A stretch of 63,845 bases of DNA, counting the filler, from Bigelowiella natans CCMP2755 (Eukaryota > Protista > Cercozoa): NCBI GenBank assembly GCA_000320545.1. It is 5 parts of 5 records of this genome, joined end to end, with 100 filler letters (N's around TTAATTAATTAA, not from the genome) between each part and the next. Parts side by side here need not be neighbours in the genome. Positions count along the whole stretch, not along the records: positions 47,603 to 61,639 come from ADNK01000486.1; 4 more parts are not named here. One strand, given 5' to 3'. Shown here in pieces: positions 47,603-59,637 of the stretch. Made by a program: the position numbers and the translations under genes. The first letter of the stretch is position 1; every line of letters starts with the position of its first letter. The notes below the pieces were generated by a model. That model was given only the letters and a program-made list of their open reading frames with translations, was not told the DNA's origin and made no database searches.

Positions 47603-47647
<45 letters not shown>

Positions 47648-47712
47648 CAGGCAACAGCGCACAACACATCGTCATGTCTTGTGCGTGCTTGCGTGTGCAT
47701 AATCTTGGCAGG

Positions 47713-48116
47713 GATTACCGTCAACAAGTCGAATGGCGACATCTTCTGGTGAGAAGAAGAAAAGAAGATGATAATGATGTTGTTGATGATGATGACAACG
47801 ATTATGAGGGAGCGTGTATTTTAAGTGTTTACGATCATGCTTGCATGCTACTAATGATAGAAGGAAAGAAAGAAAGAACTACTGAGGGGTAGTAATATCG
47901 TTCTTGTTGAATGGGTTGTGACTGTTGCTTCTTCTCTTCTTTCTCAATTCTTCTTTCCTCTCCTTTTCTCTCGCTCCATCCCTTGGTTTGTGTTGTTCTC
48001 CCTCTTTCTCCTTCCTCTTCTTCTTTTTTACCAGGTGCCAGCACTACGAGCACTCAGTAATCAAACTAACCAAGGACCGGGATATCTCGCGATTTGCGGG
48101 TAGCAACGATAAGGAA

Positions 48117-48150
<34 letters not shown>

Positions 48151-48743
48151 ATACACAACTATCTATTGCCTCTACAATGATGCAGAGATGGGACGTAAAA
48201 TATGATTCCCTGACGATAACAAGAAACGTGACATCCCTGACCCTTCTCTCGTCTTTTTCCTTATTTTTAATTCTTACCACCCACCGTCTTCTCCTCTCTG
48301 TGGCGGCGTTGTTATCGGAGCGCAGCACTGTCAATGCGACCAGCAATCCTGATGCCCCCCCCCCCCCCCCATTCCTTCTCTTCCTCTCTCCGCATCGTTA
48401 TCTTGATCATTTTGCCATGACGACGATGTTGTCACCTCGCAGGGAAGGGTTGCACGGATCCGTTGGTGCGGCTGAACGGATGGGCCGACGGTACATTATA
48501 ATATCGCTTTATCAATATTAGTGTTATTGTTATCACTGTGTAGGACAGCGAGCTCGTAAAATCAATTAACCAGTACTTGTAGCTTGTTGAGCGACAATAT
48601 CCCCCCCTCCACCCCCCCCCGTTTCTTTCCCCCCAACGCGGAACAGGACCGCTGGATACACCGGGCGTCGGATTTAGCTTCCCTGAAGATGTTGCTCTGG
48701 ATGGCCACGGCAATGTCTGGGTAGTAAGTATGAGTAGTAGTTA

Positions 48744-48775
<32 letters not shown>

Positions 48776-49109
48776 TGGGGAGAAGTATTGGCAGCTCTTG
48801 CTACTATTTCTGAGGATAGCACTATTTCTGGGAAAGGAGGGGGGGGGAGTCATGTTAGGGAAACAGTTCATGAATAATAGTAGTGATGAAACAAAGGAGA
48901 GGTACTTCTCCTGTGCCTACATCCACATCGCCTCATTCCCCTCCTTCCCCTCCTCCTCCTTCTCCTCCTTCTCCTCCTCCTGCATCCTTATAACTCATTG
49001 TAAGGTGACGGACAAGGAAAACAACAAGATCCGGAAAGTCATCAAGCCGACATCGGAGGAAATCGAGTACTAAATATTCCAATATATGATGCGCGTGCAC
49101 GCGCATGTG

Positions 49110-49158
<49 letters not shown>

Positions 49159-49622
49159 TTTGGTCTGCCAGTGTATGATGCATGATGTCGTCGTCGTGTT
49201 GTTAGACTTCTGTTTAATCTTCTTAATCTTCTTTATTCACCATGTCCTCCTCCCCCTCCCCCTCCTGAACAGAGATGGACACGACTCAGCCACCTTGTAC
49301 ACGATCGCAGGCAACCTCACATCGGGGGTGGGTTCCCTACCTACCTACCTACTTACCTACCTACCTACGTCTTTCGCCTTTCCCCCCTTGTGCTTCTTCA
49401 CAATGGTGTCTCCCCTTCCGTCAATTTGAAAATGAGAAGCGAGTGGGTGGGTGGGTGGGTGGGAGAGGGGGTAACGTAAAAGGTGCGGATACTGCGGAGT
49501 AAGCGTGGATGTTTTCTCTTCATCGGTAGGACCGGGACGGCCCTGCCCGTAGAGCGACTCTCTCGCGGCCGTACGTGCAACCATTAAACCACATGCGAGC
49601 ATTGCTCTGAGAAAACAAAAAT

Positions 49623-49655
<33 letters not shown>

Positions 49656-50824
49656 CACACACGTCACACACACACACACGCGTGTATATTTCCCCGTGAA
49701 TCACATGGAAGTCCATCTTCATCGACCTAGACGAATAATGCCTGAAAGAGCCGCATTGCTAATCGCCGCCTTTCATCCCTGGCTGCTGTCTGAGCTGGTG
49801 CTCTTTCTTTCCACGTGCTGTCCCGTTACCATCTATCAATTGCTGTGCCTCTTTCTCTCTCTCTCTCCCTCTCCCTCATGTCGCAGGCATGGAATTGATC
49901 TGGATTCGAAGGGCAACGTGTACTGGACAGAACCTTGGACGAGCAAGTAGGATGCATTTCCCCAACCCCCTCTCCCCCAAACGACGCAGCGAGCATGATA
50001 TGCCGTACGCCTGAGAACGGAACTTAAATTACACTCTGTCTTGTGTGCTGGCTGCTGCCGACCCCTCGCAGGATTCGACGTTTCGTCCCTCCAAAGAAAC
50101 AACGGGTTGATTTTCTTCCAAAGCGCGCACCCGGCGGGGAGATAGAGAGAGAATGACAACGAATGATACTTATAGCAAGAAGAAGGAGAAAATTAAGAAG
50201 AAGAAGAAGAAGAAGAGGGATATTGCTAACAATAATACAACGCTGAGAACGAAGACTTCCGAGGGATTTCGCTTCGATCTCCCCTCTACGCTCCTTGACC
50301 TTCTCGCCGTTGAAACCATTATGATGCTCATCAACACGGCCACGAGTTTCTGCTTTCCTCCTCCCCACCACTACCACACCAGCACTACCAACACCTCATC
50401 ATTCTTCATTTCTACAGTACATGCTGCCATCGTGCACGGGGGGGCAGCAATATGTGGACACCGGGACGATTCCGGTAGCTTGCTGATAGTGAGGAGAGAG
50501 GCGGGGGGGGGGGGGGGGCTGGGGGAGGTGAAGGTAATGCCGCGTGTTGGTGATGATGTTGTCGCTGGCTGGCGTGTCATATAGGGTCCTCGTTGGGGCT
50601 CCTACGAGGATATGGAATGGTTAGACAGGTGTGAGTGAAAACAGTATTAGTGGTGTGGTGGTGGTAGTCTTCGCGCTTCTGATTGTGTTAGGGATCCGTC
50701 GATAGTTTACATATTTTTGAATGACGGAATGGTGTTGAACGACACTCCCTCGACCCCCCTCCCCCCTCCTCTTTCCCTTACATACACGACGCACACACGC
50801 ACAAAAATACACGCGTATACGCTC

Positions 50825-50866
<42 letters not shown>

Positions 50867-51046
50867 ACGCACACAACACATTGGCAACTGGCTGATGGCG
50901 GTCTGTGTGGTTTTGCTTGTTCTTCTACCATAGCGACCCATGCGAGATAGACTACAAATTCTTCCTCCATTACCATGGCGACAACTGCCGATGTGCTACG
51001 CACGTGAGGTGAGAAGGGACAGGGAAAGATGGGGCAAGAGCAACCG

Positions 51047-51080
<34 letters not shown>

Positions 51081-51300
51081 GATTTAGGAATACATATACA
51101 ACATTAGCTATGAGGAACACTGATGAAATGATGACAATATCCTCTCCTCCTCCTCCTCCTCCTCCTCCTTCTTCTCCTCCTCCTCTTCCTCCTTCCCTGT
51201 CTTCTTCTCCTCCTTCTTAACGCATCATTGGACTACTCTCTACTTTCTCTTCATAGGCGAGAGAAGAATTATATCGACCCTCGCGATCCGACGGGGAAAA
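47713..51300 (+). CDS. NHL-repeat beta-propeller protein with many short exons; ends uncertain
   Basis: Exons encode GITVNKSNGDIF, FSFPEDVALDGHGNVW/VTDKENNKIRKV, LYTIAG, DGPARRATLSRP/HGIDLDSKGNVYWTE, typical of NHL repeats. Confidence 0.7.
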
Positions 51301-51441
51301 GTAAGCTTTTGAGTAGTAGTTAGTTCGACGATTGATCATGAAAAATAGTGCTCCCTTCTTGGGAAAGGGCCGCAGAGGAAGACTACGTGATTAGTGTTGG
51401 GGATCGATTTACCGCCCTTTGGCTAATATTATCGTCATTAG

Positions 51442-51473
<32 letters not shown>

Positions 51474-51557
51474 GTGCTGTTCCATGTGAAACCTATCTTC
51501 AGTGCACGATGATGAGTTGTCGCGGAACTTCCAAATTATGCTCTTCTCGTTTGCCGT

Positions 51558-51602
<45 letters not shown>

Positions 51603-52308
51603 TTACCTACCTTTCAAAGAGGGCTTTGGCGGACCGTAAGAGAACGATAAAAAAAAAGAAGATAAAGAGAAGGGCAGACTGATAATAATGATTCATTACT
51701 ATTAATGATAATAATAACCATTACGGAAAGAAATGTCGAGGCAAAACGCACTCGAATGCCTTTATTTTCTCCTTCAAATATAACACTAAAGTGAACCAAA
51801 GCTAATGACAGGGCGCCGTTCGCGGCCTGCCTCATTTTCTCTCGTTTATTGACTTGCTTCTTTTTCTTCTTCTTCTTTTTCTTCTTCTTCTTCTTCTTCG
51901 ATCTCTCTGCATTTAGCTACTATTTTCTCTCCCGCTCCTCGCAGTCAATCCACGTGAGTGTAGTAGCAGCAGCAAACCACAACGACGACGATGACAACAA
52001 CAACATCAACAACAACAACAGCAGCAGCAGCGGCAGCAGCAGCACCAACACGAACGACAAGTTCCCCGGCGGCTGTTTCCCAACCCTCCGTGTGCCAGCA
52101 GCAGCAAGAAGTATACACTCATACTCAACAACATATACTACTACAACTACTCCTCCTCCTCCTTCTCCTCCTCCTCCTCGCTAGAGCTCTTGGGACACGC
52201 TGGGTAGTGATGTTTCTTCGGAAGCAGTAAGCTCCGATGAGGCACTCAGGCGGAAGAATGAAGGTCGGGGGGAGGGGAAGGAAGGATGTTCCCAAGAGCA
52301 GAGGGGAG

Positions 52309-52361
<53 letters not shown>

Positions 52362-52838
52362 TTAAGAGCGAGAGGAAGAGCTTCATTCAACACACTGCTT
52401 GCTGGTGAGAAATTAGGCAGATCTCTTGTGAAAGATATTCTTCCCACAATCCAAACCCTTCCCCGTCCTCCTACACTTCCTCCCTTTCCCATTTTTAAGT
52501 GAGCGATGAGGAAGAGGGGGCTGAGGACAAGACGGTGCAGGCTAAGTTTGCTCAGATAGGTTGTTATTCGGACTCCCTTCTGCTTTTCTTTTTCTGTTTC
52601 TCCTCCTCCTCCTTCGTCATCATCATCGTAATCATCATCCTCTCTCTTGCGTCTTAATTGTATTGTATATCCTTCTCTGGGAAGGAAGCATGACTACTAT
52701 TTTCAAGCTGCTTCGTTAGATGTTTCCATGCTTTCTTTTGTGCCGGTGTGGGTGGGTTGCGATGGAGTCGTGAAAGAGGAGGGGGGGGGGGATGGCTCGG
52801 GAGCACGCTCTCCCCCTCCCCTCCACTCAGAAGTTGAA

Positions 52839-52928
<90 letters not shown>

Positions 52929-52998
52929 GAGTATTTAATGCTTCTTCGTCCCCCGTCCTTCTATAATATTTGCTTATAAAATTTTAATTTCTGAGTAG

Positions 52999-53399
52999 AG
53001 GCGAAGGGGAAAGCGTTGTCCCAAGCCATGAGCGATATGGACGCGGTTCGTGACCTATTGCCAGGCCGTGGGCTAGACATATCATGATGCGTAGATCACA
53101 CCGCACACTCTCCGGAGTTGAGGCGATGCTGCAGATGTTGCATATTACTTTTACCCGCTCTGCGATATTTTTCACCTTCCCTCCTCACTGATTTCTGCGT
53201 CTGCCTCTTAGCTCCGTTATATGAAGGACAAGGCAGGGGGGGAGGGTCAGGTACGGAATGTGCGTGATGGAGGCAGTTTTCTTCTTTTCTTTTTTCGCAA
53301 ACAATTCGAATTATCCTAATTCGTCTTTTTTGCTCGAAAGTAAAAATGTTTCTTGGAATAATGTAATGAGCATATAATTCGTAAAGTACTGCCATTCAT

Positions 53400-53456
<57 letters not shown>

Positions 53457-55333
53457 GAGTGAGGGAGAGAGGAGAACACTACTTTACGTTTCCATACACG
53501 GCATTTTTCAATACAACATTTCACCGTTCACGCGTGTGTTTTCTCCCTCCCTTGGCAAAGAATGTGGTAGCAAAACATGCGCAGAAGAAAAAGGAGGAGG
53601 ACGGTATAGAGGCGACGCAGCAGCGACTAGAATCCTCTGACATAGGAATGGACGAGGTAAAATCAACAAATTAAAACAAAAATATGCTGCTCAAGAATAC
53701 GGGGAAGAGACGATGATGGGGACACTACTGATGATGGTTTTGGCCCCGCAACAGAGCTGCCTTGTATTTGTCAATTCCATTTTTCAATTCTTCCGCATTT
53801 GATGACGACAAAATTCTATGAAATTGTGGGATAACCTGTGCATTTGGGGGGGAAAAAGGTGTTAGAAAAGCACGAGGATTTATCGACGCTTCATCAGCCG
53901 AGGTTATGATTGTGAGATTTCCACTGCTACTGTTACTGTCTGCCTAGTCCCTTCTCCCGATTCCCCTCGCTTGATTTCTACTTGCAGTTTCTTCCTTTCT
54001 CCTCCCTCTGCCTCTTCTTGTTGATTTCCTTTCTAATTGCATCCAACTGCCTCATTTACTAATTTCCTCTCTCCTATTGCTATTCTATCCCTCCCCCCCC
54101 CCCCCTTCTTCACTTTTCGTTTCTGACTGATGCAGAACACGGAAATCGAAGAGAATAGAGGATTATCTCAGTCGAGGTTAGGCAGCAGCCCGCGCATTAG
54201 AGCCATTTATACTAGCCAGCTTGTATGAACATTGCAGCTTCTCTAGGGGTATCATCAAATACAACCCAAAATCCACGAATAACGGTATCTAGAATGGAGA
54301 GGGGAAAATGTGTTTTCCAAAAACAAAGCGATGTGTTTTTTTTTACGGTACTACTACAACATTGAGTTTTGTCCCGGCAACGTCGCATGACATGAATTAT
54401 CGGTGTTTTTTTGCGCTCAATTGCGGACTCAAGTGAGAAGATTCCGCTTCGATGATGTACTTGATTATGAACATGATCATGATCATTTCAATCATCAAAT
54501 CAGCTCAATTCGAAGACGAGGAATTGTTGGAAAATGGAGCAGCTAAGGACGAGGAGACGGCAAGAGAAGGCTGCGAGGTTTATTTGACGTATTCCTTTAA
54601 ATGGTTCCCATAGCGACCCGCTGCATAATAAATCATTTGTACGTTACGCTTGCCTTTCTTTCTCCTCTCCCTCTTTCCTTCTTCCTTCACCTCATGTAGG
54701 AAGTAAACACGGACACCACCTTATGTGATTCCATGGAGGACCAGGTGATCTTACGAAATGAATTGTGATGAATACCTAACGGAGCGGTGGGAGAGATGGG
54801 AAAGAGGAGCAGAGGGATTCGTTCGTTTGCATTATTCTAAAAGCTACTGGTATTTATTGGACCAGCCTGACAACAAGCACATCCCCGGCATGGAGACTCT
54901 TCCTGGCGATGAGGATGCACCGGTACGCCGCAACACAGAGGAGGAGGAGGAGGAGGAGAAGGAGGAGGGTTAAGAGGAGGAGGAGGAGTTGATGCGAAAG
55001 AAAGGACCGGATTTTGTTCATGATATTTTATTTGTGTTGCTCATCAGGTAAAATTGTCGGATATTGAGTTCCTAGGTCCAAGTGCAATGCAGGTGTGCAA
55101 AGCAACGAACGCACAATGTTTGCTCCCGCTTAACTTTTCTTATTTTCGTCATTTGTGCTGGATTCCATTCTATCCCAAAATTCTAGAAGCACCGAGAGTA
55201 GTCATGTCACCACTGTTTGTCCCTTCATCCACACACTCTTGATTACTCCCAATGATATCTATGCATCCAGGCTCTAGAAGAAGAGCAGCGGAGGTTTCGA
55301 GAGGAAGAGAGAAACAAGCCGGCAAAACGATAG
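52999..55333 (+). CDS. Multi-exon hypothetical protein, 3' part
   Basis: AG/GT-bounded coding-like segments such as YWYLLDQPDNKHIPGMETLPGDEDAP, VKLSDIEFLGPSAMQ and ALEEEQRRFREEERNKPAKR*. Confidence 0.4.
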
Positions 55334-55787
55334 ATAGGGTGCACGGGATGCAAGCATCCTTGTAAGTCACGATTGTGATCAGGTAGTTTGTTCCAAAAAA
55401 TATTATATCGCCCAAACTACACGGGGAGCTAATAACATGTGTTCTTATCACCACATCCACTGCAACAAAATTAAATTATGACTGACGCTTCTTGTCAAGC
55501 ACAAGCAAGGGCGACGCCTCAGCTATATGTCCATCGAGATGACCCAACGAGCATGGCTAGTACGTTGTTGTTTGATGATTCCCTACCAGCGTTCTTACTT
55601 GTATGCATACCTCTAGCTAGCGCCTGTCTTTGCATCTAGTCCGCTGCTTGTCACATGCTGCGTGCTACCCTATACGTTCTATAGCCCTATAAGGCTAATA
55701 GCGTACACAGATGCGAATATATGTAGTTCCCGTACACAAATGCGTCGCAGCATATGCCACCTGTACGTGTAGCTAGCTGCTGCTATG

Positions 55788-58700
55788 AGACGGATGTGAT
55801 GAAGAATTAAATTTTTTCAATGGTCATCCTGATGTAGCTGTGCAATGCAGCGGCTACAGCGCTAATGTTGCATCTGTTGGTTTCTGCCACAATGTGTTTC
55901 ATGCATTTGAAAGCGTCCTCATGCGACCGATGTTGCCGCGCACTGCGCGCAGCAGTTCTGGAGTCCTTTTCAGCCTTGGTCAGCCGATTCGTGTCGTCGT
56001 TGCGATTCATGATCGCGCGCATTTGATTGCGCAATCTGATTTGTTCTCGACTGTGTGTTGGACATTGCAGGAGATGATCCATGTCCTTCAGGATGCCACA
56101 TGCATCGCACGTGGCATCTTCCTCTGTGCATTGTCCACGTGAGAACATGAATTTTCCAAGATTGCCGACACCACAGATGGCGCGCATCCATGATGTAGCA
56201 ACACTTGAAAGTTTCAGTTTGATGCCAGTGATTGAAGATGACGGGAGGAATCCAAGACTCTTGAGATGCACAGCGCGCAATGAATCATTGGACGCTTCCT
56301 CTTCGAATTCGTTGAAAGCACAGGATTTCATCACCTTGTGATGTTTTTTCAGTTCTTTTTTCAGCGCCTCTGTTGTCGCCATGACGGTGGGCAATTCGTC
56401 ACCTGACAAATCGTCAGTGATCGATTTGAGCCGACGAAACAAGGATGCTTTGTTCCATGCATTTGTGGGCACATCAATCCACGATGTGCCTTCTGGTGTT
56501 TTTCGATTTTCAATGATGAAGCCATGACTGCTCCAATCATTTGTTCCCTCATGGATTTGAGGACCGCCACCTGTGTCGATCCATGCATTGGTGCGCAACC
56601 ATGATTTGGCACACTGCACTTTGGTTTGATGTCGGGGTGGCAACGTGCCAGTGAGGACGTGGGGGACGTCGTTGGAGATGGATCCAGGCAATCCCAATGC
56701 ACGTTTCAGGGTTTGGGATTCCATGGAATCCATCTGTTTCATTCGCATGTTTCTTCGTGATCTCCATGTTGGAGCTGCGCATCTGCTGGATGCAAGGAAC
56801 CATGATTTGCAAAATTTCAGTCTGACATTCAGCGGCACAAGGTGTCTGGAACAACACAACCTTGACAAAAACCTTCGCTTCTTTTGCAATCTCAGGTGAG
56901 AAGCAAGAGCATGTTTTTCAAAGGTCAATTTGTTGTCGAAGATTGGTCCGAGACATCTGCCGCTGTCGACTCTTTTCACTTTGCCTTTGCAGATTGAGAG
57001 AGATGTTCCAGGAGGTTTGGTGTCGGTGGGCTTCGTTTCTTTTGTCAATTGCAAGGTGCCCGCTCTTGTCCCCATTGAATCGCATCCGCCATTTCATGCA
57101 CCAGTCCGTCACTTGGTTCAGGTCGGCCTGGATGTCACCTTGCATTTTCCCCCATCGGTTTGGCGAAAACAATTTGCAGGGGGCAACGTCGTCACAGCAC
57201 ACTTGGAAATCTGTGTTGGCAATTTGTTCGCAAGTGTCGCAATGGGTTGTGAAAAGGAAACAGCTGAGAGATGATCCTTCGGGGACGCCGCTCCCAAGGT
57301 TCATGTGCTCAGAGAGAGTGTTGCCAAATCTGAACCTGGCGGTGCGATCTCTGAGCCAGTCGTCGATCCACAGCAACAGCGAGCCTCGTGTTCCGCACTT
57401 GTCATGCAACTTGCGTGTCATGCCGGAATGCCAGGCTTTTGGACAAGCTTTGGAGGCATCTGTGAACAACGTGATGGCTGCAAGCTTTTCATTGTGTGCT
57501 CCATCCTCGATTGACTGCGTCATCTTTGTGAGTGCAGTTTCGCAGGATCGATTTTTCATGAATGCATGCTGATGCATGCCAATGTTTTTGGGAGTCATGG
57601 CTTCGCGGAGCCGTTGCTCTGTTGGTTTGTCTTCTGTTTTTGAAGCCATTTGCAGGAGAGAAACAGTTCTCCCGTTGAGAGGGGTGTCAAGTTCTTTGTT
57701 GGCCTTGGGGATGAGACAAAAAATGGCCGCCTTGCGTGAGCCATCTTTTTGGGCACCCCATCCATGTGACACGTTGAACATGGCCAACCACAGTTCATGG
57801 AGTTTTTTGCTTTTTTTCAACACGTTCAGGTGAACACCATCATCGCCAGGAGACTTGCACGGTGATGCTTTGTTGATCACGTTTCTCAGTTCATGCATGG
57901 AAAAATCTCTGTTGTGTGAATCAATGCTGTGAATCTTTTTGTCTTCACTTTCCCTGAAGGTGTTTCTCCAGGCCTCAGTTTCAGCGTGAAAGGTTCGATT
58001 TTTCTTGTCAGACGGGTGTGGTTTGTGGACACGTTTCCATTTCGCAACACACACTTCACATTTTTCATCTTCAGAGGTTTCGCCGTCGAGTCCTCCGAAT
58101 TCATCCCGCCCTCTGGATTTTTGGAATGATTTGCACAGCACTCTGGTGTGATTCCCATTGTTGCATTTTTCAAAGCGAGACAAGAACAATTGCCATGCTT
58201 CGCACTGAAGGGTTTCGGTGGTTCGTTCAAGTTCAGCGTTGATTTCTTGGATCTTGGTTTCTGCCAATTTTCTCTTCCGAAATTTCCTTTCGTGTTTCAA
58301 GGATCCAAGTGATTTTTCTTGTTGATCTTTGATGGATTCACATTCTTTGTCGTTTTGGTGTGGCTTGATTGGACTCCAACGTTGTCGTTTTTTTGGTGTG
58401 CAACCATCAAAAGCTTTTCCGGTGAAGTCCCAGAACCAGCGTTCAAGCTTTTTTGCATCAGCCTCCGATTGAACGTTTGGCATGCGCTGGTGCAAGTGTT
58501 CGGTGATGTTGTTCAATTTTTCGTCAAATCGTTTTGCATCAAACTTGTCGATGTCATGCATCATTGGTGAAGTCTGCTGATGGATTGCCGCAGGTTTTCC
58601 AAAGTGGACACCGAAATGGTCACTTGTCGTGGTGTGGGCCATCTGATGTTCTGTTTGGTGTGCGAAGTTTGAGGAGCACAGCACACGATCAAGTGTGCTT

Positions 58701-59222
58701 GTGTTTCCTTTTCTGAAACACGTGGCTTCCCCAGGGTTGATCATCACGATGTCATCATCCGATGACCACTGGTGCAGGTGTCTGCCACGTCTGTCTTCTT
58801 GGTTTCGGACATCGTGGGTGGAGTGCTTGGCGTCAGTGTCCCCCACGATGATGTGTTTTTTCCATTTCTGTTTCCGAATGATGTTCATTGTGAAATCTGA
58901 TCTCTCTTTCAGATGTGAGATGTTTTGGTGTGGCTGGAGGTCTGGAGGTGCACCATTGTGACAGCACATTTTTCAATGCTGTGTGTGAAAAAACCAATGT
59001 CGCAGCTGTTGTCATCCATGGGCATGTGAATCACATCTGTGTTCTTTTTTCTCAATCCAAAGCTCCCAGAGGAGCCGTTCGTCCGAATCACTTCGTGTCC
59101 CGCTGGAGGATGCAGCCTCTCCGACTCTTTGAGGCGGCCTTCCCCAAACCAGGCGAGTTCGATGTTGTTGGTGGTCATCATTTCTTTCAACATGTCACAT
59201 CTTCTGTTCATTCTTTGCCTGC
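55788..59222 (-). mobile_element. Non-LTR retrotransposon (LINE) ORF2: APE endonuclease, reverse transcriptase and CCHC knuckle; 5'-truncated, frameshifted and hypermutated
   Basis: APE motifs IIVGDTDAKH, TLD and SDH; RT motifs KSPGDDG, LIPK, GRTVSLL, QHAF, DASKA, GVPEGSSLS, CCDD and CLG; knuckle CDACG...HLLQC. Frameshifts near 58970 and 56990. Flanked by CTGCTGCTATG (55777-55787) and CTGCTGCCATG (59223-59233). Confidence 0.95.
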
Positions 59223-59637
59223 CTGCTGCCATGATGACAACATGATGCACCGCAAAGCTTTGCGTCGTCGATCACGAATGTGCAGACACACACATGCCAG
59301 CATGTGTGTGTGTGTGTGTGTGTCATGTTGTGCATGCCCATGGAGACTCAAGTCTCCATGTTGATTCACAAGCCTCCACATGCCACGTCATCCGCTGGCC
59401 CGCGCACATGCATGATGGACCATCTAGGTGTGTGCGGTACGATGACGGTGAGGTACCCCAAAACTGTGATCCCATCATGCCACAGTGACTAGCACCATGT
59501 GCATCAGTCAGAAGCCTCATGATCGTAGCCCACGTACATGTGTACGTACGCACGCACCCTGCAGTCATTGTGAAACATGAACGGGGCTGCAGAAGCTATT
59601 GTGGCGGTGTCTAAGATGATGTAACATTTGATCTTGT

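What the first reader, a model, noticed from the sequence alone, without database searches (positions are those of the whole stretch)
55777..59233. Target-site duplications differ by one TA/CA change, implying mutation in chromosomal DNA after insertion
The LINE is flanked by CTGCTGCTATG (55777-55787) and CTGCTGCCATG (59223-59233), identical except TA versus CA. The CA copy lies inside the TA-free zone. A TSD is host DNA that never passes through the element's RNA, so this change cannot come from RNA editing or RT error. The evidence is a single site, and its polarity is inferred from context.
Basis: partly seen in the sequence, partly recalled or inferred. Interest (0 to 1): 0.8.

Follow-up and report, generated by a model that had tools for sequence, protein, structure and literature searches.

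The report
LINE flank repeat and TpA hypermutation
A broken retrotransposon copy lies in a 3.2-kb stretch where every TA has become CA or TG, a DNA-level hypermutation already reported for the alga Bigelowiella natans. The one-letter difference between its flanking repeats fits that process but cannot prove it, because that letter may belong to the element's own tail.

Summary
The two 11-mers exist as described and sit exactly at the two ends of a minus-strand, 5'-truncated endonuclease/reverse-transcriptase LINE. This is more than chance gives (about 3e-4 per register; CTGCTGC occurs only 3 times in 14 kb). All seven fetched relatives end in ...GTCTCA(TA)n, and the window copy ends in ...GTCTCA-TA. 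So the last four bases of the left 11-mer (TATG, which hold the TA in question) may be element tail, target DNA or priming microhomology. Only CTGCTGC (7 bp) is unambiguous target duplication, so the TA/CA mismatch is suggestive rather than a clean before/after control.

- There is no TA over 3229 bp.
- Family TA sites became CA (49) or TG (41), randomly interspersed on both strands.
- The 191 bp beyond the LINE's 5' junction are also TA-free, with CATG enriched ten-fold.

A 2026 preprint (10.64898/2026.01.13.699255) showed de novo TpA-to-CpA/TpG hypermutation in B. natans, whose genome holds this LINE family. This locus is therefore a new example of a known process.

One point is unexplained: a LINE-5'UTR-like motif lies 350 bp upstream.

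The parts
55597..55776 (.). Unconverted left flank: purine/pyrimidine-alternating, TA-rich block
   Evidence: 55597-55787 holds TA 24, CA 11, TG 18 (sum 53 per 191 nt; piece mean 35) and CATG 1.
55777..55783 (.). Left copy of the unambiguous direct repeat CTGCTGC (target-site duplication core)
55784..55787 (-). TATG (minus strand CATA). Ambiguous 4 nt: the element's conserved 3' terminus CA+(TA)1, or the start of the duplicated target. Holds the TA of the finding.
   Evidence: All 7 family copies read ...GTCTCA(TA)n and the window reads ...GTCTCA-TA-GCAGCAG. The BLAST alignment to L001 runs to 55784.
55788..59222 (-). 5'-truncated LINE body: ORF2 from residue 30 of the family protein to the stop (55807-55809), plus a short 3' UTR. 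Two frameshifts (near 58940 and 56988), no internal stops.
   Evidence: tblastn of P0001: aa 30-123 at 59223-58942, 122-768 at 58939-56987, 768-1158 at 56988-55810. ORFs. 67-72% nt identity to L001.
58607..58891 (-). Endonuclease (apurinic-type) domain, C-terminal part. The N-terminal part continues to about 59223 in another frame.
   Evidence: Pfam PF14529 E=2.4e-10 and PF03372; alignment.
57053..57709 (-). Reverse-transcriptase domain. The YxDD box reads CCDD (57188-57199).
   Evidence: Pfam PF00078 E=3.3e-13. Family YCDD versus window CCDD.
56197..59424 (.). Saturated TA-free zone (no TA in 3228 bp)
   Evidence: rho TA 0 and rho CA+TG 1.52-1.54 in three successive 1-kb windows. One Tyr (outside the zone, TA at 55836) in the 1218 residues of the three ORF pieces.
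59223..59229 (.). Right copy of CTGCTGC
   Evidence: Family homology stops at 59223/4.
59230..59233 (.). CATG next to the right repeat. Holds the CA of the finding and, on the minus strand, an ATG in frame with ORF2.
59234..59424 (.). TA-free flank beyond the LINE's 5' junction, with no homology to the family's 5' UTR, ORF1 or ORF2
   Evidence: TA 0, CA 27, TG 29 (sum 56), CATG 10 against 0.96 expected (Poisson 7e-8). tblastn with 5 ORF1 proteins finds nothing here.
59425..59575 (.). Partly converted flank. The counts are for 59425-59625, which also covers the next part (the 5'UTR-like motif).
   Evidence: 59425-59625 holds TA 11 and TA+CA+TG 54; all 5 YATR tetramers are CATG. Composition falls to background beyond about 59634.
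59576..59625 (-). Motif resembling the 5' terminus and 5' UTR of the LINE family, in the same orientation as the LINE, with an ATG at the same distance as the family's ORF1 start. Unexplained.
   Evidence: 36/50 identity to L007. Score 21 against a next best of 13 in the whole piece; 0 of 150 query shuffles reach 21. Alignment with L001, L003, L007 and L009 5' ends.

Best explanation
A 5'-truncated LINE with apurinic-type endonuclease and reverse transcriptase lies on the minus strand. Its family has a (TA)n tail and is also present in Bigelowiella natans. It inserted by target-primed reverse transcription into a TA-rich, purine/pyrimidine-alternating block and duplicated 7 to 11 bp of target. 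The host's TpA-directed DNA hypermutation then changed every TA to CA or TG, on either strand, one site at a time until saturation. The affected domain covers almost the whole LINE and at least 191 bp of the target DNA on its 5' side. The right-hand repeat copy lies in that domain and the left-hand copy does not. If the duplicated target began with TA, as it may in this family, the TA/CA difference is one more product of that process. What is shown: the element, its ends, the repeat, the zone, the both-strand conversion and the converted flank. What is inferred: that the mismatched base was target DNA, that the organism is B. natans or close kin, and the chemistry. The preprint's proposal is adenine deamination by an ADAT2-like enzyme.
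For: - Element and ends.
- The repeat abuts both homology ends and is rarer than chance.
- ORF2's N-terminal 29-31 residues are conserved in three other subfamilies and absent here, with a sharp loss of homology at 59223.
- Both flanks share an unusual composition: TA+CA+TG is 53 on the left and 56 on the right, against a mean of 35. This is as expected if the LINE split one block. TA is 24 on the left and 0 on the right, and CATG is 1 versus 10.
- Of 149 family TA sites, 49 are CA, 41 are TG and 3 are TA in the window. Outcomes are randomly interspersed: 45 runs against 45.6 expected.
- Tyr became His or Cys throughout.
- Nearly identical family copies from marine metagenomes differ mostly by clustered TA-to-CA/TG changes: 9 of 19 internal differences, P about 1e-7 to 1e-9.
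- In L006 a 14-nt TA-repeat duplication starts directly after GTCTCA, so target duplications in this family can begin with TA.
- Preprint 10.64898/2026.01.13.699255 reports de novo TpA-to-CpA/TpG mutations in B. natans mutation-accumulation lines, and TpA-depleted coding sequences enriched in RT and endonuclease-RT domains.
Against: - The informative base lies in 4 nt that are identical to the element's conserved 3' terminus, so it may have come from the element's RNA.
- CATG is so common in the converted flank (52 per kb) that a CATG beside a 7-bp duplication is not very unlikely (about 5%).
- A 5'UTR-like motif 350 bp upstream in the same orientation, and an in-frame ATG in the right copy, suggest a more complex structure.
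- The organism was not identified directly.
- No empty site and no second copy of this subfamily could be fetched.
Confidence: 0.5

Rival explanations
1. The duplication is real but only 7 bp (CTGCTGC). The TATG at 55784-55787 is the element's own CA(TA)1 terminus copied from its RNA, and the CATG at 59230-59233 is simply the neighbouring target sequence. The TA/CA 'mismatch' then compares two unrelated positions and says nothing about mutation.
For: All 7 family copies and the window read GTCTCA+TA... at the 3' end. Three of four matching bases next to a duplication arise by chance about 5% of the time, and CATG is present at 52 per kb in that flank.
Against: In L006 the TA repeat after GTCTCA is itself duplicated at the 5' flank. 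Priming on a (TA)n tail predicts targets that begin with TA. Even in this reading the right-hand CATG most likely descends from a TA-containing tetramer: in the unconverted half of the block only 1 of 11 YATR tetramers is CATG.
Confidence: 0.25
2. The 11-mer pair is not a target-site duplication. The element runs on to about 59625, where a family-like 5' UTR sits. It has lost ORF1 and the first 29 codons of ORF2, through internal deletion, template jump or an ORF1-less variant. The right 11-mer is internal and supplies the new ORF2 start codon. The TA-free zone is then wholly inside the element.
For: The 5'UTR-like motif is the best match in the whole piece, in the right orientation, with an ATG at the family's ORF1 position. 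There is an in-frame ATG at 59232-59230. The hypermutated domain would then run from near the 5' end to near the 3' end of one unit.
Against: - The 350 nt between the motif and ORF2 show no similarity to ORF1 of either subfamily, although ORF2 keeps 67-72% nt identity.
- No duplication is found at the outer ends.
- The 10/11 repeat at both homology ends would be chance, at about 0.005.
- The left flank outside the element shares the odd composition of 59234-59625.
Confidence: 0.2
3. The TA loss arose in RNA, by ADAR-like A-to-I editing of the LINE transcript or by reverse-transcriptase error, before integration rather than in chromosomal DNA.
For: ADAR-type enzymes prefer U before the edited A (general knowledge; also noted in the preprint).
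Against: Editing of the sense RNA would give only TA-to-TG on the sense strand. Here CA (49) and TG (41) are equal and interspersed. The non-LINE flank is also converted. De novo DNA mutations of this type were observed experimentally.
Confidence: 0.03
4. The TA-free zone is a sequencing or assembly artefact, for example miscalled modified thymine.
For: None found. Considered because of the complete absence of TA and the two frameshifts.
Against: The same TA-to-CA/TG signature distinguishes independently assembled marine metagenome contigs of the family. It is reported from Illumina-sequenced mutation-accumulation lines.
Confidence: 0.02

Closest known systems
TpA-to-CpA/TpG hypermutation of integrated foreign DNA in Bigelowiella natans (Mettrop et al., bioRxiv 10.64898/2026.01.13.699255, 2026)
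   Same: Exclusive loss of TA with a gain of CA and TG on both strands. The target is foreign or mobile DNA. [quoted passage not shown] RT and endonuclease-RT domains are among the TpA-depleted coding sequences they list.
   Different: The preprint demonstrates the process on a giant-virus insert and a virophage insert, which still keep many TA (3.3% and 9.2%). Here a single LINE copy is converted to saturation (0 TA). The preprint's main text does not mention retrotransposons, flanks, boundaries or target sites. The organism of the window was not identified directly.
Repeat-induced point mutation (RIP) of fungi
   Same: Dinucleotide-specific transitions on both DNA strands that ruin repeated or mobile DNA and can reach beyond the element.
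   Different: The direction is opposite: RIP turns CpA into TpA and creates stop codons, whereas here TpA is destroyed. No stop codons can arise. Inactivation is through Tyr to His/Cys and Ile/Leu/Val changes, such as YCDD to CCDD. Dependence on duplication is not shown.
ADAR or APOBEC editing of retroelement intermediates in animals
   Same: Clustered transitions in retroelements, and a preference for U/T before the edited A in the case of ADAR.
   Different: Those act on RNA or on cDNA before integration and mark one strand. Here both strands are marked equally and flanking chromosomal DNA is included.
LINEs with simple-repeat 3' tails inserted by target-primed reverse transcription (general knowledge of non-LTR retrotransposons)
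   Same: Endonuclease plus RT in ORF2, a separate ORF1 in full-length copies, 5' truncation, a short repeat tail, and a junction where tail and target duplication cannot be told apart.
   Different: The tail here is (TA)n. The clade was not determined, and the duplication length for the family is unknown.

Membership tests
Non-LTR retrotransposon (LINE) with apurinic-type endonuclease | Reverse-transcriptase domain | tested here: met
   PF00078 E=3.3e-13; 64% identity to the intact 1158-aa P0001.
Non-LTR retrotransposon (LINE) with apurinic-type endonuclease | N-terminal endonuclease domain in the same ORF | tested here: met
   PF14529 E=2.4e-10 and PF03372; alignment.
Non-LTR retrotransposon (LINE) with apurinic-type endonuclease | Conserved 3' end with a simple-repeat tail shared by copies | tested here: met
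   ...ACATCCGTCTCA(TA)n in L001-L007; the window has the same end with one TA.
Non-LTR retrotransposon (LINE) with apurinic-type endonuclease | Target-site duplication flanking the insertion | tested here: inconclusive
   A 7-bp exact repeat (10/11 over 11 bp) lies at both homology ends, p about 0.001-0.007. 4 nt overlap the element's end, and an upstream 5'UTR-like motif complicates the picture.
B. natans TpA hypermutation (Mettrop et al. 2026) | [quoted passage not shown] | tested here: met
   rho TA 0 and rho CA+TG 1.53, 1.54, 1.52; thresholds.
B. natans TpA hypermutation (Mettrop et al. 2026) | Changes are TpA-to-CpA and TpA-to-TpG only, on both strands | tested here: met
   Family TA sites: 49 CA, 41 TG, 3 TA, the rest ordinary divergence. 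24 of 41 amino-acid differences from the closest relative P0015 are explained by such changes alone.
B. natans TpA hypermutation (Mettrop et al. 2026) | Acts on chromosomal DNA (de novo mutations in cultured lines) | not testable with these tools
   Indirect support only: the converted non-LINE flank and strand symmetry.
B. natans TpA hypermutation (Mettrop et al. 2026) | Organism is Bigelowiella natans | tested here: inconclusive
   The LINE family includes B. natans gene models P0004 and P0019. No flanking gene identified the window, and exact look-ups of window ORFs found nothing.
Fungal RIP | C-to-T at CpA, giving TpA excess | tested here: not met
   TA is absent while CA and TG are enriched (rho 1.9 and 1.42).
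ADAR-type editing of the RNA intermediate | A-to-G on the transcribed (sense) strand only, confined to the element | tested here: not met
   Both strands are equally affected, and the flank is converted.

The most novel reading that the evidence does not exclude
The hypermutated domain is not centred on the LINE. In minus-strand orientation it starts to build up at a LINE-promoter-like 5' UTR motif (59625) and is saturated from 59424 to 56197. It fades within the last 75-410 bp before the LINE's 3' end and is absent from the contiguous block on the other side. The domain may therefore be one transcription unit, which would mean the TpA editing is guided by, or coupled to, transcription or an RNA from the unit rather than by foreignness or copy number as such.
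Probability: 0.2. Interest if true: 0.6.

Novelty: new member of a known kind. Interest (0 to 1): 0.33.

Why it matters
TpA-directed hypermutation of foreign DNA in a chlorarachniophyte has so far been described only in a 2026 preprint, for two viral inserts and by genome-wide composition. This locus shows what the end state looks like on one retrotransposon:
- Every TA is removed over 3.2 kb, with no stop codons created.
- All tyrosines inside the zone and the RT active-site Tyr are lost.
- Both strands are hit at random.
- Conversion spills into at least 191 bp of neighbouring DNA on one side only.
- Near-identical active copies in ocean metagenomes already differ mainly by clustered TA-to-CA/TG changes, so the process acts on this family in wild populations.

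The target-duplication argument itself is a weak tool here. The family's (TA)n tail puts the only informative base in the ambiguous junction.

Tried and rejected
- The metagenome-contig scan with an N-terminal ORF2 alignment returned only the contig already held as L005. The viral-contig scan found nothing.
- Exact look-ups of two window ORFs, intended to fetch the same locus or an empty site from other assemblies, found nothing on record.
- tblastn of five ORF1 proteins and blastn of the family against both flanks gave no ORF1 or 5'-region homology apart from the 50-nt 5'UTR-like motif.
- A search for a duplication at the alternative outer ends (about 59626 and about 55783) gave only a non-abutting 8/9 match.
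- An alignment with TA, CA and TG collapsed to one symbol, meant to test whether the two flanks are related, produced only low-complexity matches. It was discarded as uninformative.
- Rfam and tRNA scans of the piece found nothing above threshold.
- No recognisable host gene lies in the piece.
- The large representative-protein search was not used, because the protein family was not in doubt.
- RNA editing and a sequencing artefact were considered and rejected (see the rival explanations).
Full report
**Observation.**
- They differ only by TA versus CA.
- They are the only matches to CTGCTGC[CT]ATG in the 14-kb piece, and the core CTGCTGC occurs three times on the + strand.
- Random pairs of host positions give at least 10/11 in a fixed register about 3e-4 of the time, 7/7 about 4e-4, and at least 10/11 anywhere in two 30-nt windows about 0.007.

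**What lies between them.** Three minus-strand ORFs (59250-58909, 58969-56918, 57075-55807) carry Exo_endo_phos_2 and RVT_1 domains.
- The word search found an intact 1158-aa relative, P0001, at 64% identity. Its 90% cluster holds a Bigelowiella natans gene model and several marine-metagenome proteins.
- Seven contigs of 5.0-5.2 kb (L001-L007) carry this family, with ORF1 of 483 aa and ORF2 of 1158 aa.
- The window copy aligns with ORF2 residues 30-1158 across two frameshifts and no stops, at window 59223 to 55810. Nucleotide homology runs from 59224 to 55784.
- The first 29-31 residues of ORF2 are conserved in three other subfamilies (L001, P0016/L009, P0017). They are absent here, with a sharp loss of homology upstream of GRQR.
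- So there is a junction at 59223 (give or take 2 nt), and the copy looks 5'-truncated.

**The TA-free zone.**
- There is no TA between 56196 and 59425, a gap of 3229 bp. The next largest gaps are 333 and 172 bp.
- rho TA is 0 and rho CA+TG is 1.52-1.54 in three successive 1-kb windows.
- The three ORF pieces have a single Tyr in 1218 residues, at 55836, outside the zone. Family tyrosines appear as His or Cys, and the RT box YCDD reads CCDD.
- Of 149 TA sites of L001, the window has CA at 49, TG at 41 and TA at 3. CA and TG outcomes are randomly interspersed: 45 runs against 45.6 expected.
- The closest relative, P0015, is 77-81% identical. Of the 41 amino-acid differences from it, 24 are explained by TA-to-CA/TG changes alone.
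- This symmetry excludes editing of a sense RNA intermediate.
- Towards the LINE's 3' end the zone fades rather than stops. TAs survive at 55785, 55808, 55836, 55856, 55863 and 56196, while family TA sites at 55798, 55831, 55872 and 56055 are converted.

**The flank.**
- The 191 bp beyond the 5' junction (59234-59424) have no similarity to the family's 5' UTR, ORF1 or ORF2.
- They contain no TA and have CA 27 and TG 29. There are 10 CATG against 0.96 expected (Poisson 7e-8).
- The left flank next to the LINE (55597-55787) has the same unusual density of TA+CA+TG steps: 53 versus 56, against a piece mean of 35. But it keeps 24 TA and has one CATG.
- Both flanks are purine/pyrimidine-alternating, and composition falls to background before about 55400 and beyond about 59634.
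- The simplest reading is that the LINE split one block and only the half on its 5' side was converted.
- This is stronger evidence for mutation of non-LINE chromosomal DNA than the single mismatch.

**Why the mismatch itself is weak.**
- All seven family copies end in ...ACATCCGTCTCA followed by TA units: TAT, TATA, TATAT, or 12 or more units.
- The window reads ...ACATCCGTCTCA-TA-GCAGCAG.
- So 55784-55787 (TATG, minus strand CATA) is identical to the element's conserved terminus. The TA in question may be the one-unit tail copied from RNA, the start of the duplicated target, or priming microhomology.
- Only CTGCTGC is unambiguous.
- In favour of a longer duplication: in L006 a 14-nt TA-repeat duplication begins directly after GTCTCA, so targets of this family can begin with TA.
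- In favour of the short one: CATG is present at 52 per kb in the converted flank, so a CATG beside a 7-bp duplication is not rare.
- I put the odds that the TA/CA difference is a post-insertion change of target DNA at about one in two.

**An unexplained complication.**
- On the minus strand, 59625-59576 resembles the 5' terminus and 5' UTR of the family.
  - It shows 36/50 identity to L007.
  - Its score is 21 against a next best of 13 in the whole piece.
  - None of 150 query shuffles reach that score.
- It shares ACCGCCA with the second subfamily (L009) and ATAGCTTCT with the first. It has an ATG at the distance of the family's ORF1 start.
- The right 11-mer also contains an ATG in frame with ORF2.
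- The element might therefore run to 59625 with ORF1 lost, which would make the repeat internal.
- Four points count against this:
  - the intervening 350 nt match no ORF1;
  - no outer duplication exists;
  - the left flank shares the block's composition;
  - the repeat would have to be chance.
- The L003 contig shows two copies of the family lying tail to tail within about 110 nt, so neighbouring fragments are plausible.

**What is known.**
- Preprint 10.64898/2026.01.13.699255 reports a mutation-accumulation experiment in B. natans. In it, 230 of 231 mutations in a giant-virus insert and a virophage insert were A-to-G or T-to-C, all at TpA.
- It also reports 324 TpA-depleted coding sequences enriched in RT, endonuclease-RT and DDE domains, and 124 TpA-depleted/CpA+TpG-enriched clusters. 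It proposes an ADAT2-like adenine deaminase.
- Its main text does not mention retrotransposons, flanks, boundaries or target sites.
- No other paper on such a process was found.
- The window zone meets the preprint's cluster thresholds.

**Independent support from wild populations.** The seven near-identical family contigs come from different metagenome assemblies. They differ at 19 internal sites, and 9 of these are TA-to-CA/TG changes. The changes are clustered within a few bases and fall on both strands (P about 1e-7 to 1e-9).

**Verdict.**
- The repeat is probably a target duplication of at least 7 bp.
- The mismatch is compatible with DNA-level TpA hypermutation but does not prove it.
- That conclusion is established by other evidence here and has already been published.
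- The organism is inferred, not shown, to be B. natans or close kin.

Noticed in passing
window 59576-59625 (minus strand): A 50-nt motif resembling the 5' terminus and 5' UTR of the LINE family, with an ATG at the position of the family's ORF1 start. It lies 350 nt upstream of the truncated ORF2 in the same orientation, and nothing ORF1-like follows it.
   Followed up: partly
L001-L007 (alignment): Near-identical full-length copies from separate marine metagenomes differ mainly by clustered TA-to-CA/TG changes. Examples are L006 columns 3957/3961/3965 and L005 columns 2925/2931 and 4235/4247. Intact, presumably active copies are therefore being hit in wild populations.
   Followed up: partly
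L001:4001-4750: The 3' part of ORF2 in all intact family copies is already TA-poor (9 TA in 750 nt against 10-26 per 250 nt elsewhere), and Tyr is scarce in the C-terminal 396 residues (5 against 35 in the first 777). This may be an older partial round of conversion that the element survived.
   Followed up: no
P0019 (B. natans gene model, ORF1) and P0017 (ENA, ORF2 N-terminus): P0019 has 2 Tyr where the family ORF1 has 11. P0017 shows RRY to GRC and GYE to GCE. These are further partly converted copies.
   Followed up: no
P0015: The closest unmutated relative of the window's ORF2 (77-81% identity) is labelled Prorocentrum lima in EukProt. The label may reflect transcriptome cross-contamination or a shared LINE lineage.
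   Followed up: no
L003:5160-5189: The 3' end of a second family copy lies in inverted orientation about 110 nt downstream of a full-length copy, so family copies cluster.
   Followed up: no
window 59334-59361: A perfect hairpin, CATGGAGAC-TCAA-GTCTCCATG, lies inside the TA-free flank, next to a (GT)10 run at 59300-59322.
   Followed up: no
window 47603-55400: The rest of the piece is rich in microsatellites ((GA)n, (CA)n, (CT)n, (TCC)n, (CAT)n, poly-C/G) and has no recognisable gene.
   Followed up: no
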